Positions 3,728-50,769 of a stretch of DNA of 64,000 nt are shown here, piece after piece. A program made the position numbers and the translations under genes. The stretch's first letter is position 1. The number at the start of each line of letters is the position of its first letter. The stretch lies in IMG/VR virus record IMGVR_UViG_3300046692_000091, positions 186,001 through 250,000 of that record. The stretch is one strand, 5' to 3'. The notes below the pieces were generated by a model, which was given only the letters and a program-made list of their open reading frames with translations, was not told where the DNA came from and ran no database searches.

Positions 3728-4001
3728 TAAGGCTACTACTTCTTTCTTCGGCGCTTGCTTTGTCATTGGCTTAGCAGCGTTGAGTGTGGTACTCTGGAAC
3801 AAATACAATCCACCTCAGTTAGACCCAGGTTATCTGGCGTTCCAAGCTGATACGGATAATCGTCTGGCCATTCGTAAGAAGCGTTTGGCCTATGAAGCTG
3901 CATGTATCCACGACGAGCGTCTGTTGGATATTCAATTTGGGAAAGTAGTCTATGACTGTGGTAAGATCTCAAAGCAGGTCTACCCAATGCCAGATGTTTA
4001 A
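3720..4001 (+). CDS. hypothetical membrane-anchored protein
   Basis: ATG 3720 overlaps the upstream gene end; N-terminal TM segment. Confidence 0.7.
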   Translation: MNDKATTSFFGACFVIGLAALSVVLWNKYNPPQLDPGYLAFQADTDNRLAIRKKRLAYEAACIHDERLLDIQFGKVVYDCGKISKQVYPMPDV

Positions 4002-4014
4002 AACCATCTGAAGA

Positions 4015-4023
4015 CTACATTAC
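4015..4023 (+). promoter_or_regulatory. phiKZ-type early promoter-like motif (variant)
   Basis: CTACATTAC, intergenic, 30 nt upstream of an ATG; variant of the CTATATTAC motif repeated in this window. Confidence 0.5.
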
Positions 4024-4052
4024 AATAGTGATAAGAACCTAAGGAGTTGTAA

Positions 4053-12125: not shown

Positions 12126-13385
12126 TTAACCTTTTACGCAGAGAATTTGTTTGAGAGTATGGACGATGTCCACGAGTTGTTCTTGTGCAGACATTACGTC
12201 TTCGATGTTCTTGTAAGCTTTTGGTGTTTCATCGATGACAGAGATATCCTTACGACATTCTACACCAGCTGTATCACGGACATGATCTTCCAGGGTGAAT
12301 GTCTTAGCAGCCTGAGTACGGGACATGACTCGGCCAGCTCCGTGTGAACACGAGCAGAAAGAATCACGGTTACCTTTACCACGGACGATGAAAGACTTAG
12401 CGCCCATCGAACCAGGGATAATCCCGAGTGTACCTTTATCTGCGTTCACTGCACCCTTACGAGTTACCAGAACGTTGTTACCGAAGTGGCGTTCTTCTGA
12501 TACGTAGTTGTGGTGGCAGTTGATGGCCGACATATCGGAATCGATTGGCAGACCTAGAGTACGGTGGATAGCACCAAGAGTAGCATGCATCATGATCGAA
12601 CGGTTAAGTGCAGCGAAGCGTTGTGCCCAGGACACGGCTTCGATGTAGTCGTTGTAATATTGCGAACCTTCGGGGAGGTAAGCGAGATCACCATCTGGCA
12701 GATGAATGAAGAAACGTTTCATTTCTTCTTTTGCTTTCGAGATAAAGTAAGTACCGATTGCGTTACCGATACCACGAGAACCAGAGTGCAGCATCACCCA
12801 CACTTGATCGGATTCATCCAGACAGATCTCGATGAAGTGGTTACCTGTACCGAGAGTACCTACATGGTTCCATGCACGAGCTGCAGCTTTCGCCAACTTA
12901 GGATGACGTTCTACAATACGTTCCAGATGCTTACGCAGTTTCTCTGCTTCATCACGGATAGCTTGAGATTGGTGAGTGAACACGGATACCGTACCAAATG
13001 CACCACGATCGTTCTTCCCACCGTTGTCAGTACGGCCATGAGGCACTGAGGCTTCGATAGCGGCACGCAAATGGCCAAGAGAGGTCGGTAGTGCTGTGGA
13101 CTTAAAAGTAAGGCGCTGCGCAGCCATACCACAACCGATATCAACACCTACTGCGGCTGGAATGATTGCGCCTTTAGTAGCAACCACAGAACCCACTGTT
13201 GCACCTTTACCCAAGTGTACGTCGGGCATCACAGCAATGTGCGAATAGATGAATGGGAGGGCAGCAATGTTCTTGAGTTGAGAAATTGCTTCTTTCTCTA
13301 CTGGTACGCCAACGGTCCAGCCTTTGATTGGTTTAGAACCTGGTTCTACTGTATCACCAATCAGTTCAAATGTTTTCTGTTTCAT
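12126..13385 (-). CDS. rtcB: RtcB family 3'-phosphate RNA ligase
   Basis: Motifs MPDVHLGKGATVGSV, VGVDIGCG, GTLGTGNHFIE, MLHSGSRG, CHHNY, IPGSMG, SCSHGAGR, DETPKAYK. Confidence 0.97.
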   Translation of the reverse strand: MKQKTFELIGDTVEPGSKPIKGWTVGVPVEKEAISQLKNIAALPFIYSHIAVMPDVHLGKGATVGSVVATKGAIIPAAVGVDIGCGMAAQRLTFKSTALPTSLGHLRAAIEASVPHGRTDNGGKNDRGAFGTVSVFTHQSQAIRDEAEKLRKHLERIVERHPKLAKAAARAWNHVGTLGTGNHFIEICLDESDQVWVMLHSGSRGIGNAIGTYFISKAKEEMKRFFIHLPDGDLAYLPEGSQYYNDYIEAVSWAQRFAALNRSIMMHATLGAIHRTLGLPIDSDMSAINCHHNYVSEERHFGNNVLVTRKGAVNADKGTLGIIPGSMGAKSFIVRGKGNRDSFCSCSHGAGRVMSRTQAAKTFTLEDHVRDTAGVECRKDISVIDETPKAYKNIEDVMSAQEQLVDIVHTLKQILCVKG

Positions 13386-13449
13386 ATAAAGCCTCACGCG
13401 GATGGAAAGAGGAATTGTTACATACACTGACTTTGCCAGTATTATTAAA

Positions 13450-14222: not shown

Positions 14223-14244
14223 TATACTATTACGTTCTCAGTAT
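14223..14244 (-). promoter_or_regulatory. putative ncRNA-associated promoter motif
   Basis: ATACT-gagaac-GTAATAGTATA on the minus strand. Confidence 0.7.
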
Positions 14245-16827: not shown

Positions 16828-17668
16828 CGGTCCCAGCATCCAGGATTCAAGCCCTGGTTATCAACGAACACGGGGTCGTTGGTAGATCGCCGCTGGGCGA
16901 GCTTTTCATCCCAATGTACAGCTTGAGCTGGTCGCGGCATTCCGCTAGAGGTCAAACCGTTCCGAAGGGTCTATCTACTTACTCGCCTTACAACGCTTCA
17001 GAGTGATGGAGGGCAAGTAAAAGAATCGGGGTAACCCACTATTCCCTTGGCAGCGGTCATGGTTTAAGATGACTTGCGGAATAGCTCGTTACATGGGTGC
17101 ACTATAGCGTACACGTCGCTGCCTTTCGGCCTTCTCATCGATTACCAGCCGCAGCTAGTTCTCTGTGTATGGCCCAGTAGCCTCTTTACGGGAGTCATCT
17201 ACTGGGAAGGTTACCACTACAGGACTATCACCTTCTATGGCCTGGTATTCCAACCAGTTCATGTAACCAAGACGGACATCTGATCCGTTGCAGCCGAGTC
17301 GTAACGCTTCTTCGGTATGGCGCCTTAGTAGTCAGGACTATCTGACCTTTGGGGTATCATGAGTACGGGCTTCGAGTTTCCCTGATATTCCACTATTCTA
17401 GTCTTTTGTGGAACGTCATTGGGTATCATTCGTAGATCTATACAAGTGTAACTCTGTGCCCTAGTCTGAGGATTAATCAGACACCTGTATTGATCCGAGC
17501 CTATCCCTTCCAGGCTAGGTCTTCACACTCCCACTTCTGGGGGAATGCGTATGTAAAAGTTTGATGGAACGATCCTCTACCTTCATCTATTCGGACTTAG
17601 GCGACCTTTTCAGCACAGTGGGGTGGAGTGCACTTACCCAACATCCTACCATGTCTTTCACATGCTCT
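16828..17668 (-). ncRNA. putative ~850-nt highly structured ncRNA
   Basis: No credible ORF; more than 10 visible helices, a GAAA tetraloop, a repeated loop motif; G-U pairs favour the minus strand. Boundaries approximate. Confidence 0.7.
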
Positions 17669-18361: not shown

Positions 18362-18437
18362 TGGCGGGCATCCAGGGAGTCGAACCCCGAACCGACGGAT
18401 TTGGAATCCGTTACTCTGCCAATTGAGCTAGACACCC
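18362..18437 (-). tRNA. tRNA-Trp(CCA)
   Basis: ACGGA-TTCCAAA-TCCGT anticodon arm; G73; CCA. Confidence 0.93.
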
Positions 18438-18444
18438 GAATGAA

Positions 18445-18528
18445 GAAAGGGAACAGGAATCGAACCTGCGTTTCCGGCTTGGTACTTATGGTGGCCACCG
18501 GTGTCCTAGGCCGCTAGACGACCCCTCT
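18445..18528 (-). ncRNA. tRNA-like RNA (Glu-type body) with 18-nt anticodon loop
   Basis: AGAGGGG-TC-GTCT-AGCGGCCT-AGGAC-A-CCGGT-[18 nt]-GCCGG-AAAC-GCAGG-TTCGATT-CCTGT-TCCCTTT-C; no CCA. Confidence 0.7.
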
Positions 18529-18646
18529 CACAAACTTGGTCGGGTTTTTGTTAAACCAGGCTAACCGATATCCCTGGTCCCTATCGAGTAAGCTCTAGGG
18601 GAGTCTTACTCTTACGCTCGTTTGGAGACTTAACGACAGTCTCTCG

Positions 18647-18668
18647 TATACTATTACACTGCCAGTAT
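18647..18668 (-). promoter_or_regulatory. putative ncRNA-associated promoter motif
   Basis: ATACT-ggcagt-GTAATAGTATA. Confidence 0.7.
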
Positions 18669-20920: not shown

Positions 20921-20996
20921 TGGCTCCGAGACTAGGATTCGAACCTAGGACCAACGCATTAACAGTGCGCGGCTCTACCAACTGAGCTATCTCGAA
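20921..20996 (-). tRNA. tRNA-Asn(GTT)
   Basis: GCGCA-CTGTTAA-TGCGT; G73; CCA. Confidence 0.93.
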
Positions 20997-20997
20997 A

Positions 20998-21074
20998 TGG
21001 CTCCATGACCTGGACTCGAACCAGGGACACCTTGATTAACAGTCAAGTGCTACTACCAACTGAGCTATCATGGA
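20998..21074 (-). tRNA. tRNA-Asn(GTT)
   Basis: CTTGA-CTGTTAA-TCAAG; G73; CCA. Confidence 0.93.
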
Positions 21075-21231
21075 ATGTACTGGGATGCCGGGCTTTACCG
21101 GATGATCGTTTTATCTAGACTCCCTCTCATGTCTAGCGATGCTTGTATCCCCAAGGATAGCCTAGGCTTGCAGCGAGCTAACGGTTACCCGTTTGGTGCA
21201 AGAGCTGATCTAGTCTACCGATGGAAATTCT

Positions 21232-21315
21232 TTATCTATCAGCGGGTCTTGAAGCCGCACACGGTCGATGGTATTTAGCCAACGATTGTCCTACCGATTG
21301 GACGATGATAGATAA
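21232..21315 (-). ncRNA. degenerate tRNA-like RNA with extended anticodon arm
   Basis: TTATCTATCA/TGATAGATAA closing stem; D-arm GTCC-AATCGGTA-GGAC; 7-bp arm TCGTTGG/CCATCGA; T-like arm GCGG-CTTCAAGAC-CCGC. Confidence 0.55.
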
Positions 21316-21439
21316 TGAAACGTTTACCTAGACAGTTCCCTAATAACTGATTACCCTGCGCGTCAGGTCGTTCGTTTATTAGGTAGGCGTGTATGCGACG
21401 CCTCGTTTTAGTTCTGCTCCTAAGAGCCTTCTGTCTAGC

Positions 21440-21519
21440 ACGCCCCTACCGGATTTGAACCGATGACCGATCAACGTATGGTTACCGTCGATTGCTCTAC
21501 CTAGCTGAGCTAAGGGGCG
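21440..21519 (-). ncRNA. tRNA-like RNA (Ile2/Met-type body) with 7-bp anticodon stem and 9-nt loop
   Basis: CGCCCCT-TA-GCTC-AGCTAGGTA-GAGC-A-ATCGACG-GTAACCATA-CGTTGAT-CGGTC-ATCGG-TTCAAAT-CCGGT-AGGGGCG-T; no CCA. Confidence 0.75.
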
Positions 21520-21523
21520 ACAA

Positions 21524-21608
21524 TGGTGGGTGCAGAAGGATTCGAACCTTCGAAGTCAGCGACGGGAGATTTACAATCTCCTGGGTTTGGCCACTCCCCA
21601 ACACACCC
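21524..21608 (-). tRNA. tRNA-Tyr(GTA)
   Basis: GGAGA-TTGTAAA-TCTCC; long variable arm; CCA. Confidence 0.93.
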
Positions 21609-21853
21609 GTATCAGCAGCAGCCGGTCCACCCGGTCATGAGGTTTTAACTCTTCTGTGCTGATAGTAAAACATTTGAAATTAGCTATGGAGAAAGGCGAC
21701 TCGTTTTATCTCCTGACTTGTACCCATGCACCCATTATTGATCCACTGGGCGACTCCTTTAGTGTGGATCGGGCTGTACCTTACCGTCGTTGTAAGCTAA
21801 TTTCAAAACTAACGAGGCAGTAGAAGTCCGAAGGACCAATACCACCTCTAAGA

Positions 21854-21930
21854 TGGCGCAACCAGCGGGACTCGAACCCGCGACCTCTTGCGTGACAGGC
21901 AAGCATTCTAACCAACTGAACTATGGCTGC
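21854..21930 (-). tRNA. tRNA-Asp(GTC)
   Basis: CTTGC-CTGTCAC-GCAAG; G73; CCA. Confidence 0.95.
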
Positions 21931-21933
21931 AAT

Positions 21934-22026
21934 AAACTAGTCGCGCTTTAACCCGCGTAAGCTAATAGCCCTGTTATGGCGGGCCGTCCAAATCAAGGGA
22001 GTTGAACCCGAGTTCTCGACTAGTTT
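21934..22026 (-). ncRNA. four-way-junction RNA with T-like and D-like arms in permuted order
   Basis: 10-bp closing stem AAACTAGTCG/CGACTAGTTT; arms GGG-TTCAACT-CCC, GCCC-9nt-GGGC, CGC-GGGTTAAA-GCG. Confidence 0.55.
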
Positions 22027-22033
22027 AAAAAAA

Positions 22034-22111
22034 TGGGGTGAGCTACGGGTCTCGAACCCGTGACCTCCAGGGTCACATCCTGGCACTCTAACCAACTGAG
22101 CTAAGCCCAAC
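22034..22111 (-). tRNA. tRNA-His(GTG)
   Basis: CCAGG-ATGTGAC-CCTGG; G-1:C73; CCA; atypical A32 and U1.C72. Confidence 0.85.
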
Positions 22112-49539: not shown

Positions 49540-49567
49540 TATTGGGATATTCATTGAGGGATTTGTT

Positions 49568-49816
49568 ATGAAACCGATTACGGTTGCTGTTGTTGGTGAT
49601 GACCCACATGCTTTGCGTGTGCTTGCTAAACTCCATGAACTCGATCCCACCAAGATCATTGTCGTAGGTCATGCGCCACAGATCTACGAACGTCCATTTC
49701 AATCTGACCCATTCGAATTCATGTCCCATCATGAAGTTCAGCCTTTGATCTATCCGAAGAAGGAAGTCTTGGCAGTCAGTGAGAAAATGTTGGCTCTACT
49801 AAAACGAGCTGCTTGA
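49568..49816 (+). CDS. hypothetical protein
   Basis: SD GAGGGA; ATG 49568. Confidence 0.7.
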   Translation: MKPITVAVVGDDPHALRVLAKLHELDPTKIIVVGHAPQIYERPFQSDPFEFMSHHEVQPLIYPKKEVLAVSEKMLALLKRAA

Positions 49817-49872: not shown

Positions 49873-50769
49873 ATGTGCAATAACTTGGAAGCGCTGCAAA
49901 AGCTGATCGATGAATCTTTGGTTTTGGATGGTGTAACTGACCTGACCCTTACCGGTTGGGCGGATGATGAACGTTATGACAGTCGTGGTACCGTAATCAA
50001 TCGTATCACTACGCCATTTGGTATTGCGGTTGGTGGTGTTTCGATCAGCCCAGGTGGTGGTAGTCGTGGGGGCATGGGTTTTGGTTTCCGTGATACCCAC
50101 GAGCAAGACAAGCCAATTACTATTGATCAAGTTCGTGGTGTACTGGTTACGGCTTTGGCTACTTCGCAAACTGATCAGGGCCGCGTTCTGGCTACTTGCC
50201 TGGCATCGATTGCAGAGAAGCTTACCGCTAATTGCTTCCATCCGGTTTCGTATGATCTGGTTGTTGAAGCAGCCAGTGATCCAACCGTAGCTTTGACCAT
50301 GACAAATGGCATGCAAACCATTCAAATCGACACCAAACCAGTTGAAGCTTTTGCACAAACTGTCAAACTCGATCTGGACGTTCCATACATCCTGGGTCAA
50401 GGTTTCGTGAATGTCTTGGCGGGTGAAGCTGATCGCGGTCATTCCCCTACTGGTCTGTCGACTCTGGTAGACGGTAAATGGGTACGTCATACCGGTATCT
50501 CCAGTTACTCTTTGGGTGAAGAGGAGAAACCAAATGTCGATTCTCTAGAGGTCGAAGAAATTATGGCCTTGGTTTCTGCAGAACGTCGTGAACTTACTAC
50601 CAAGATACTTATTGCCATCATCAAGCAATTGAATACCCTGGGTGGTTTCACTAACATCTATCAGGTCAACATGTCCCAAGGCGAATATCGTGGCGGTAAG
50701 CCTACGGTTGTTGTTCGTTTGGTGAATACACATTTGCGCAAAAACTACAGCTTGGAATTCCGGGCGTAA
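49873..50769 (+). CDS. hypothetical protein
   Basis: SD GAGGA; 298 aa. Confidence 0.8.
   Translation: MCNNLEALQKLIDESLVLDGVTDLTLTGWADDERYDSRGTVINRITTPFGIAVGGVSISPGGGSRGGMGFGFRDTHEQDKPITIDQVRGVLVTALATSQTDQGRVLATCLASIAEKLTANCFHPVSYDLVVEAASDPTVALTMTNGMQTIQIDTKPVEAFAQTVKLDLDVPYILGQGFVNVLAGEADRGHSPTGLSTLVDGKWVRHTGISSYSLGEEEKPNVDSLEVEEIMALVSAERRELTTKILIAIIKQLNTLGGFTNIYQVNMSQGEYRGGKPTVVVRLVNTHLRKNYSLEFRA

What the first reader, a model, noticed from the sequence alone, without database searches (positions are those of the whole stretch)
18445..18528. tRNA-Glu-like RNA with an 11-nt insertion in the anticodon loop
Seen: intact acceptor stem, Glu-type D-arm and T-arm, but the anticodon loop is the 18-nt GGCCACCATAAGTACCAA, and there is no CCA. 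The intact pairing elsewhere argues against random decay. Inference: an intron-like insert removed and religated (RtcB is encoded nearby), a nuclease decoy, or a non-decoding tRNA mimic.
Basis: partly seen in the sequence, partly recalled or inferred. Interest (0 to 1): 0.7.

Follow-up and report, generated by a model that had tools for sequence, protein, structure and literature searches.

The report
Conserved non-decoding tRNA-Glu mimic in phage
A jumbo Pseudomonas-type phage carries, next to its tRNA-Trp gene, a conserved tRNA-shaped RNA gene with a glutamate-tRNA body and no usable anticodon, so it is most likely a tRNA mimic and not a broken or intron-containing tRNA; what it binds is unknown.

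Summary
Window 18445-18528 (minus strand) is a full cloverleaf (Rfam tRNA 36.1 bits, cut-off 29). It has a tRNA-Glu-type D-arm and a 4-nt variable loop. Its "anticodon loop" is the 18-nt GGCCACCAUAAGUACCAA, and it has no CCA, although all 10 ordinary tRNAs of this phage encode CCA.

The window lies in a 315-kb jumbo phage related to Pseudomonas phage Psa21. Homologues exist in two related phages. One keeps almost the same loop (15/18). The other replaces the whole arm with an 8-bp hairpin capped by UUCG, so there is no anticodon to restore.

The element is 92% identical between two genomes whose neighbouring gene is only 47% identical at four-fold sites. Five stem pairs show compensatory changes. 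This indicates purifying selection, not decay.

Three sister phages lack the element. Beside tRNA-Trp they carry a circularly permuted version of the same Glu-type fold (YrlA-like topology), which also shows covariation.

No splicing endonuclease, BHB motif, Ro60 gene or CCA-adding enzyme is present. RtcB occurs across the clade and is not specifically linked.

Best reading: a non-decoding tRNA-body mimic. A decoy or scaffold function is inferred only. No expression data exist.

The parts
18445..18529 (-). Element X: a tRNA-Glu-like, non-decoding tRNA-shaped RNA gene (84 nt plus a conserved G at -1 that pairs with discriminator C73).
   Evidence: Rfam tRNA 36.1 bits. RNAalifold on three homologues returns the cloverleaf including G-1:C73. 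92% of stem cells are paired and 5 pairs show double changes.
18479..18496 (-). 18-nt loop GGCCACCAUAAGUACCAA in place of a 7-nt anticodon loop. Two G-C pairs plus an AA bulge can extend the stem.
   Evidence: Read directly. Arm fold. 15/18 conserved in L003 (binomial 0.0017 at the neutral rate). Replaced by a UUCG-capped 8-bp hairpin in L010.
18503..18521 (-). U8 C9 plus the Glu-type D-arm GUCU-AGCGGCCUA-GGAC (U11:A24, U13.G22, G18 G19). With the 4-nt variable loop AAAC (18470-18473) this forms the tRNA-Glu 'augmented D helix' pattern.
   Evidence: Read directly. It is the only such D-arm in the genome. It is invariant in stem positions in all X and P copies.
18453..18469 (-). T-arm GCAGG-UUCGAUU-CCUGU with a canonical T-loop.
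   Evidence: Pair 49:65 is G-U, A-U or G-C in the three homologues.
18362..18437 (-). Canonical tRNA-Trp(CCA), 7 nt downstream of X. Probably the same transcript.
   Evidence: ARAGORN and Rfam 59.8 bits. X or its permuted counterpart lies beside tRNA-Trp in 5 of 6 genomes.
18643..18658 (-). Promoter-like motif TGTAATAGTATACGAG (preceded by aaaatact-N5), about 115 nt upstream of X.
   Evidence: The same motif lies on the same strand at window 22187 (before tRNA-His, the start of the tRNA cluster) and at 14234. Promoter function is inferred.
18530..18642 (-). Conserved structured leader between the motif and X.
   Evidence: Nearly identical in L002 and L020, where it directly precedes tRNA-Trp. 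Also present in a metagenome relative.
12126..13427 (-). RtcB RNA ligase gene. Context only; no specific link to X is shown.
   Evidence: Pfam PF01139, E 5.6e-128. Present across the clade whether or not X is there.

Best explanation
X is a functional, non-decoding tRNA mimic derived from a tRNA-Glu-type gene.

Inferred expression and processing: it is probably transcribed from a phage promoter-like motif about 115 nt upstream, together with tRNA-Trp, and freed by the tRNA-processing enzymes (RNase P at the 5' ends).

Shown structure: it folds into an ordinary L-shaped tRNA body. It has an intact D/T-loop elbow, the Glu-specific augmented D-helix, a 4-nt variable loop, and an 8-bp acceptor helix including G-1:C73. 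Its 'anticodon arm' is only a closed helix with an 18-nt cap and cannot read a codon.

Shown evolution: selection keeps the body and the helices. The cap is free to be replaced (a UUCG hairpin in one relative). The whole fold can be circularly permuted in sister phages, where the acceptor is capped and the ends lie in the anticodon stem.

Inferred function: the conserved function therefore lies in the tRNA body, not in decoding and probably not in aminoacylation. The most likely role is to be bound by a protein that recognises tRNA(Glu)-like bodies. It could act as a decoy or sponge for a host tRNA-targeting factor, or as a Y-RNA-like scaffold.
For: - Cloverleaf and tertiary nucleotides are intact.
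- Homologues occur in G002 (L003:2467-2550) and G010 (L010:1756-1831). Across the three copies 92% of stem cells are paired, against 38-57% in slid controls. Five pairs changed on both sides, three of them in the anticodon stem.
- X is 77/84 identical between the window and L003, while four-fold sites of the adjacent alginate-lyase gene are 47% identical. The functional tRNA-Trp next door is only 62/76 identical. Flanks are not alignable beyond about 10 nt.
- The anticodon arm is an 8-bp UUCG hairpin in L010.
- Each of the six closest genomes has exactly one Glu-type D-arm element. It is X in three and a permuted version (P) in three, always in the tRNA cluster just upstream of the alginate-lyase gene and beside tRNA-Trp in five of the six.
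- P is 100% paired, with 4 compensatory pairs.
- X lacks CCA, while 10/10 canonical tRNAs here have it.
- A promoter-like motif is shared with two other places in the cluster.
- At least 25 unrelated IMG/VR contigs carry Glu/Gln-type genes with intact stems and 13-32-nt 'anticodon loops'.
Against: - No expression or processing data exist. No RNA run holds the element.
- There are only three X and three P sequences, so covariation counts are small.
- L003 and L010 share two acceptor mismatches (G2.A71, C3.A70), and L010 has one T-stem mismatch.
- The closest relative (G001, 80% at four-fold sites) lacks X altogether, so it is dispensable or replaceable.
- High identity between the window and L003 could partly reflect recombination at a locus that is clearly mosaic.
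- L003 and L010 encode C73-CCA, which would fit an aminoacylatable end. This does not fit the idea that the acceptor end is irrelevant.
- No binding partner is identified. The decoy or scaffold role is pure inference.
Confidence: 0.6

Rival explanations
1. X is a decaying pseudogene of a phage tRNA-Glu gene. Its anticodon loop was destroyed by an 11-nt insertion or duplication (the loop holds the 10-bp palindrome GGTGGCCACC), and it survives only because it is young.
For: - No CCA in the window copy, unlike all canonical tRNAs here.
- Absent from the closest relative G001 and from 17 of 23 related records.
- Two acceptor mismatches in L003 and L010, and one T-stem mismatch in L010.
- Default ARAGORN does not call it.
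- No expression data.
Against: - 92% identity against 47% at neutral sites. X is more conserved than the neighbouring functional tRNA-Trp.
- Five compensatory pairs.
- The L010 arm is a perfect 8-bp UUCG hairpin, which random decay does not produce.
- The permuted counterpart in sister genomes is also under structural selection.
- All tertiary-interaction nucleotides are retained.
Confidence: 0.17
2. X is a cis-acting processing or stability element. On this view a tRNA-shaped structure recruits RNase P or RNase Z to cut the polycistronic tRNA/mRNA transcript, or protects a neighbouring RNA end, as in tRNA punctuation or the mascRNA/MALAT1 arrangement. The released RNA would have no function of its own.
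For: - X and P always sit inside the tRNA cluster within about 450 nt upstream of the alginate-lyase gene. P and the L010 copy lie directly before its ribosome-binding site.
- An own promoter-like motif and a conserved leader lie upstream.
- The anticodon arm and the acceptor end are both dispensable in one or other version.
Against: - A capped acceptor (P) is not an RNase P substrate in the usual sense.
- Adjacent genuine tRNAs already provide processing sites.
- The Glu-specific D-arm and the 18-nt loop are conserved beyond what a generic processing signal needs.
Confidence: 0.13
3. X is a real tRNA precursor whose 11-nt insert is excised and the halves rejoined (for example by RtcB), giving a decoding tRNA. 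ARAGORN's reading is tRNA-Gly, anticodon ACC.
For: - ARAGORN in intron mode gives a 75-nt tRNA with loop GUACCAA, which has U33 and A37.
- RtcB is encoded 5 kb away on the same strand.
- Some unrelated phage genes have a canonical 7-nt loop followed by an insert (L118 CUCUGAC + 11 nt; L149 CUUUGAC + 23 nt).
Against: - No BHB motif and no splicing endonuclease in the phage. Bacteria have none (own knowledge).
- The 'mature' loop is not conserved: L003 gives GCACCAA and L010 has no loop.
- Anticodon ACC on a Glu-type body fits no bacterial isoacceptor (own knowledge).
- RtcB is clade-wide and unlinked.
- The permuted sister form cannot decode at all.
Confidence: 0.04
4. X is an aminoacylatable but non-decoding tRNA-like RNA. 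Its conserved G-1:C73 pair, the main bacterial HisRS identity element, would let it be charged (His) for a role outside the ribosome's A site.
For: - G at -1 and C at 73 are present in all three homologues and are predicted to pair.
- L003 and L010 encode C73-CCA.
- The phage's own tRNA-His also has G-1:C73.
- HisRS charges minihelices that carry this pair (own knowledge).
Against: - The window copy has no CCA, and the phage has no CCA-adding enzyme.
- The acceptor has two mismatches in L003 and L010.
- The permuted counterpart has a capped acceptor.
- Three sequences are too few to exclude chance for two positions.
Confidence: 0.06

Closest known systems
Bacterial Y RNA YrlA (Rfam RF02553) and D. 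radiodurans Yrn1: tRNA-like modules of Ro60/Rsr-bound RNAs (Chen et al. 2014, PMC4201824)
   Same: Non-decoding RNAs that keep the tRNA D-arm, T-arm, elbow contacts and an acceptor-like helix. YrlA has the order V-T-AS-D, as in the permuted sister element P. Yrn1 has the opposite orientation with a non-canonical 'anticodon' loop, as in X. They are often encoded near RtcB in bacteria and are found in some phages.
   Different: There is no Ro60/TROVE gene in this phage. The Rsr-binding motif GNCGAA is not seen. The Rfam YrlA model gives no hit on X or P, only sub-threshold hits that span two adjacent tRNAs. X has open 5'/3' acceptor ends like a real tRNA.
Canonical bacterial tRNA-Glu
   Same: U8 C9, D-arm GUCUAG-GGCCUAGGAC, U11:A24, U13.G22, a 4-nt variable loop lacking residue 47, and a standard T-arm.
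   Different: No UUC anticodon and no 7-nt loop. Pairs are A1:U72 and G2.U71 in place of G1:C72 and U2:A71. The discriminator is C, not G. An extra G-1 is present. No CCA.
Archaeal/eukaryal intron-containing tRNAs (BHB introns joined by RtcB)
   Same: Extra nucleotides in the anticodon loop. An RtcB ligase is encoded in the same genome.
   Different: No bulge-helix-bulge motif and no endonuclease. The exon junction is not conserved among homologues. One homologue has a closed hairpin instead.
Non-aminoacylated viral tRNA-like transcripts (murid gammaherpesvirus 68 vtRNAs/TMERs) and the two stable RNAs of unknown function in the phage T4 tRNA cluster (own knowledge)
   Same: Virus-encoded tRNA-shaped or tRNA-cluster RNAs that are processed like tRNAs but do not decode.
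   Different: Different viruses and polymerases, with no sequence relation. Their functions are also unclear.
Phage tRNAs that escape host anticodon nucleases through anticodon-loop changes (for example T5 tRNA-Lys against PARIS; own knowledge, cf. PMC11455837)
   Same: Phage tRNA-cluster genes whose anticodon loops depart from the host's. The same genomic setting of tRNA supply plus RNA repair.
   Different: Those remain decoding tRNAs with 7-nt loops. X cannot decode.

Membership tests
Canonical tRNA (Rfam RF00005) | Cloverleaf with 7/4/5/5-bp stems and a score above the curated cut-off | tested here: met
   36.1 bits against 29. All four stems pair.
Canonical tRNA (Rfam RF00005) | 7-nt anticodon loop with U33 and a purine at 37 | tested here: not met
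   The loop is 18 nt here, 17 nt in L003 and a UUCG-capped hairpin in L010.
Canonical tRNA (Rfam RF00005) | 3' CCA encoded, as in every other tRNA of this phage | tested here: not met
   10/10 canonical tRNAs have CCA. X has C-UUC. L003 and L010 do have C-CCA.
tRNA-Glu identity (E. coli set: augmented D helix, anticodon U34 U35 C36 A37, G1:C72, U2:A71; own knowledge) | Augmented D helix: U11:A24, U13.G22, and residue 47 missing | tested here: met
   Read directly from the sequence. Invariant in all X and P copies.
tRNA-Glu identity (E. coli set: augmented D helix, anticodon U34 U35 C36 A37, G1:C72, U2:A71; own knowledge) | Anticodon UUC with A37, and first acceptor pairs G1:C72 and U2:A71 | tested here: not met
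   No UUC in loop context. The pairs are A1:U72 and G2.U71. The discriminator is C.
Protein-spliced intron-containing tRNA | Bulge-helix-bulge motif at the exon-intron borders | tested here: not met
   The fold of the arm shows a 5-bp stem plus 2 G-C pairs, with no 3-nt bulges around a 4-bp helix.
Protein-spliced intron-containing tRNA | A splicing endonuclease is available | tested here: not met
   PF01974 is absent from the 315-kb phage genome, and the control search finds it in 4 archaea. The host enzyme could not be tested.
Protein-spliced intron-containing tRNA | The same mature anticodon loop is restored in homologues | tested here: not met
   GUACCAA (window), GCACCAA (L003) and no loop (L010).
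Group I intron-containing tRNA | A self-splicing intron (more than about 200 nt) in the anticodon loop | tested here: not met
   The insert is 11 nt. No intron family matches there.
YrlA / bacterial Y RNA (RF02553) | Match to the family model | tested here: not met
   No hit on X or P. The 19.7-34.8-bit hits (cut-off 69) only span pairs of neighbouring tRNA or tRNA-like genes (in L003, X's T-arm plus the start of tRNA-Trp).
YrlA / bacterial Y RNA (RF02553) | Ro60/Rsr (TROVE) gene in the genome, usually within 4 kb | tested here: not met
   PF05731 is absent from G000.
YrlA / bacterial Y RNA (RF02553) | Permuted order V-T-acceptor hairpin-D | tested here: not met
   X has the normal tRNA order. 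The sister element P in G001, G003 and G004 has the permuted order.
tRNA pseudogene | Divergence at about the neutral rate, with stem-breaking changes in relatives | tested here: not met
   77/84 identical against 47% at four-fold sites. Five compensatory pairs. Only 5 of 63 stem cells are unpaired.
Expressed, processed small RNA | A stable transcript with defined ends | not testable with these tools
   No RNA run holds the element. Only the source metagenome does.

The most novel reading that the evidence does not exclude
Psa21-like jumbo phages, and by extension many other phages that carry Glu/Gln-type genes with 13-32-nt 'anticodon loops', encode a class of tRNA-body mimics. The fold works in either normal or circularly permuted topology. 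These RNAs would act as RNA anti-defence or takeover factors by titrating a host protein that recognises the tRNA(Glu) body. Candidates are a tRNA-targeting immune nuclease or transferase, GluRS/HipA-type signalling, or glutamyl-tRNA reductase.
Probability: 0.2. Interest if true: 0.85.

Novelty: new variant of a known kind. Interest (0 to 1): 0.6.

Why it matters
Phage tRNA clusters are usually read as codon-supply or nuclease-escape devices. This case shows selection on a tRNA-shaped RNA that cannot decode. The same fold appears in sister genomes in a permuted form that cannot be charged.

That points to a function carried by the tRNA body alone. If the partner is a host defence or translation factor, this would be an RNA-based counter-measure of a kind not yet described for phages.

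It would also give a reason for the many "odd" or unannotated tRNA-like genes in viral metagenomes. The permuted element is unannotated in the Psa21 GenBank record.

Psa21 is cultivable, so the question can be tested directly.

Tried and rejected
- **Expression.** Two run searches and one read-laying found only DNA metagenomes. The one "RNA" run holds only tRNA-Trp-like words. So no expression evidence is available.
- **More homologues.**
  - An exact D-arm+stem 26-mer found only L065.
  - A CM over 22 related records found only G002 and G010.
  - A metagenome scan and a genome scan gave other Glu-type oddities but no further X.
- **Loop as a shared motif.** A 14-mer scan of viral contigs gave only chance hits. 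One call failed on pattern length.
- **Loop as antisense.** The phage genome has no other site complementary to the conserved loop beyond chance.
- **RtcB association.** RtcB is absent from the flanks of about 100 other loci that match the Glu-type D-arm pattern. It is clade-wide in relatives. A specific link is rejected.
- **Y-RNA membership.** No TROVE gene and no YrlA model hit.
- **Thermodynamic signal.** The single-sequence fold has z = -0.01, which is uninformative. The cloverleaf lies within about 1.3-2.3 kcal/mol of the MFE.
- **Literature.** Seven searches found no description of this class.
- **Streptomyces look-alikes.** The flanking ORFs had no Pfam hits.
- **23S-rRNA-like hit.** The match was not reproduced.

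Full report
**Where the window lies.** It is bases 186001-250000 of a 314,814-bp IMG/VR virus record. The nearest isolate is the jumbo Pseudomonas phage Psa21 (Tepukevirus). All 12 tRNA-model matches of the genome lie in one minus-strand cluster inside the window.

**The observation.** On the minus strand, 18445-18528 reads AGAGGGG-UC-GUCU-AGCGGCCUA-GGAC-A-CCGGU-[GGCCACCAUAAGUACCAA]-GCCGG-AAAC-GCAGG-UUCGAUU-CCUGU-UCCCUUU-C.
- The Rfam tRNA model matches these exact ends at 36.1 bits (cut-off 29), with 20 nt where the model has 9.
- Default ARAGORN misses it. In intron mode it reports tRNA-Gly(acc) with an 11-nt intron.
- The nucleotides for tertiary contacts are all present: U8, A14, G15/C48, G18 G19, U54 U55 C56 and A58.
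- The D-arm, C9 and the 4-nt variable loop are those of bacterial tRNA-Glu.
- The ten canonical tRNAs of the window all encode CCA. This element does not.

**Homologues.** The neighbouring alginate-lyase-family gene (Pfam PF08787) brought in 63 related loci. A covariance model of the element, run over 22 related jumbo-phage records, found it in only two others: G002 (L003:2467-2550) and G010 (L010:1756-1831).
- The G002 copy has almost the same loop: GGCCACCAUAGCACCAA, 17 nt.
- The G010 copy replaces the whole anticodon arm with CUUGAGGA-UUCG-UCCUCAAG, a perfect 8-bp hairpin with a UUCG tetraloop.
- Across the three copies, 92% of stem cells form pairs, against 38-57% when partners are slid. 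Five pairs changed on both sides, three of them in the anticodon stem.
- RNAalifold independently returns the cloverleaf plus a G-1:C73 pair.

**Selection.** Four-fold degenerate sites of the adjacent gene are 47% identical between the window and G002. They are 31% and 19% identical in the comparisons with G010.
- The element is 77/84 identical between the window and G002, and the loop is 15/18 identical. Binomial probabilities at the neutral rate are 3e-18 and 0.0017.
- The functional tRNA-Trp, 7 nt away, is only 62/76 identical.
- The flanks cannot be aligned beyond about 10 nt.
- The conserved block therefore coincides with the RNA. This argues for purifying selection rather than recent transfer of a DNA segment, although the locus is clearly mosaic.
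- Against a clean picture, G002 and G010 share two acceptor mismatches (G2.A71, C3.A70). The window copy has repaired these through three substitutions but has lost the C73-CCA that the other two encode.

**The permuted sister element.** A search for the Glu-type D-arm finds exactly one X-type or P1-type element in each of the six closest genomes and none in the other seventeen records. Psa21 also has the weaker second copy, P2.
- In G000, G002 and G010 it is the element above.
- In G001, G003 and Psa21 it belongs to a different arrangement placed after tRNA-Trp: GAGGG-AAAC-[T-arm]-ACUGUCC-UUCG-GGGCAGU-UC-[Glu D-arm]-A-CCCUC.
- That is the same tRNA body circularly permuted. The acceptor helix is closed by a tetraloop, and the RNA ends lie in the anticodon stem.
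- Its three copies are 100% paired with four compensatory pairs. G003 and Psa21 carry a second, weaker copy in tandem.
- The order V-T-acceptor hairpin-D is the one described for the tRNA-like module of bacterial YrlA Y RNAs (PMC4201824).
- The phage has no Ro60/TROVE gene, and the YrlA model does not match.
- The region is unannotated in the Psa21 record.

**What this excludes.**
- *An intron.* There is no BHB motif and no splicing endonuclease in the phage. No conserved mature loop can be restored: GUACCAA here, GCACCAA in G002, and none in G010.
- *A specific RtcB link.* RtcB (window 12126-13427) is present in G001, G002, G004 and G005. In G002 it lies 44 kb from the element, and it is not near similar elements in other phages.
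- *A decaying pseudogene.* This is hard to reconcile with the conservation, the covariation and the engineered-looking hairpins. Given only three sequences and no expression data, it keeps some weight.

**Likely mechanism.** The motif aaaatact-N5-YGTAATAGTATACGAS occurs on the gene strand at window 22187 (before tRNA-His, at the head of the cluster), at 18658 (115 nt before the element) and at 14234. Promoter function is inferred.
- The element and tRNA-Trp would be one transcript, cut by the tRNA-processing enzymes.
- What is selected is the L-shaped body with the Glu-type augmented D-helix and closed helices. Neither the anticodon nor, given the capped acceptor of the permuted form, the 3' end is selected.
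- The best-supported reading is therefore a non-decoding tRNA-body mimic that works by being bound. The partner is unknown.
- Candidates from general knowledge are tRNA-targeting defence enzymes, or proteins that read the tRNA-Glu core (GluRS, glutamyl-tRNA reductase).
- The conserved G-1:C73 (the bacterial HisRS identity pair) and the CCA in two copies keep an aminoacylation variant alive at low probability.

**Wider context.** A pattern scan of IMG/VR for Glu-type D-arms with more than 26 nt before the T-arm returned about 100 loci.
- After filtering for intact acceptor, T and anticodon stems, at least 25 distinct genes have 13-32-nt "anticodon loops". Most lack CCA. Some have a canonical 7-nt loop followed by an insert, and some have long capped hairpins.
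- Similar cases are rare in bacterial genomes. One example is three Streptomyces genomes with a UUCG-capped arm.
- Seven literature searches found no description of such a class.

**Verdict.** The feature is real and conserved. It is most likely a functional tRNA mimic, and a new variant within the known kind "tRNA-like non-coding RNA". Its function remains to be found by experiment.

Noticed in passing
window 21440-21519 (-): A second non-canonical tRNA ('Y'). It is a perfect cloverleaf (Rfam 46.3 bits) with a 13-nt anticodon loop CGGUAACCAUACG and no CCA. Default ARAGORN calls it Thr(ggt); in intron mode it calls Tyr(gta) plus a 6-nt intron. Its orthologue in G001 has an identical body but a wholly different arm with a 7-nt loop CUAAUAA. 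It shares ACCAUA with the loop of X.
   Followed up: partly
L002:2910-2978; L020:2840-2912 and 2918-2978; L004 (Psa21):2842-2910 and 2917-2977: Circularly permuted Glu-type tRNA-like elements with a capped acceptor and their ends in the anticodon stem. They lie between tRNA-Trp (or tRNA-Ser) and the alginate-lyase gene. They show covariation and are unannotated in the Psa21 GenBank record.
   Followed up: yes
window 22187, 18658 and 14234 (minus strand): A repeated motif aaaatact-N5-YGTAATAGTATACGAS ahead of the tRNA-His sub-cluster, the X-Trp unit and a downstream gene. It is a candidate phage promoter.
   Followed up: partly
window 18530-18642 (-); L002:2700-2825; L020:2630-2750: A conserved ~110-nt structured leader with several hairpins between the promoter-like motif and the first tRNA of the unit. 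It may be another small RNA or a processing signal.
   Followed up: no
G002 contig 49540-49608 (+), 50125-50198 (+); G003 contig 3957-4037 (-): More tRNA-like genes with abnormal anticodon arms in relatives. One is 69 nt with a 3-nt loop (CCGGC-UUA-GCCGG, 59.5 bits). One has a 13-nt loop containing a GUAA mini-hairpin. One has a long GC hairpin in place of the arm and a non-pairing acceptor.
   Followed up: partly
L066 (G001), L067 (G002), L001:7507-7596 (Psa21 'tRNA-Asn', 90 nt): Type-II tRNAs (long variable arm) that carry the Asn anticodon GUU. This architecture is not expected for tRNA-Asn.
   Followed up: no
L007:2792-2868, L008:2885-2960, L010 upstream of 1756: Type-I tRNA-like genes with a GCU 'anticodon', G (not U) at position 33 and U at 37. 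The conserved loop core is GGCUU.
   Followed up: no
window 16840-17660: An ~800-nt stretch without a convincing ORF between tRNA-Leu and the alginate-lyase gene; the equivalent stretch in Psa21 is also unannotated. A 40-bit match to bacterial LSU rRNA positions 330-384 at 17211-17265 (-) was not reproduced. That search gave only a weak group-II-intron-domain match.
   Followed up: partly
window 20921-22110 (-): The upstream sub-cluster supplies tRNAs His, Asp, Tyr and Asn (x2). These are the four queuosine-family tRNAs cut by colicin E5-type anticodon nucleases (own knowledge). Together with RtcB, this fits a defence-evasion role for the cluster.
   Followed up: no
L433:3405-3490, L441, L445 (Streptomyces genomes); L436; L437: Bacterial chromosomes also hold rare Glu-type tRNA-like genes with altered anticodon arms. 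Three Streptomyces copies have a UUCG-capped extended arm and a bulged 8-bp acceptor. The flanking ORFs have no Pfam match.
   Followed up: partly
run X2 (rhizosphere metagenome), contig of 116,668 bases: A close relative of this phage has 161 other letters in place of the 174-nt Trp+X segment, while the leader and the lyase gene are kept. The locus is therefore a swap-prone cassette.
   Followed up: no
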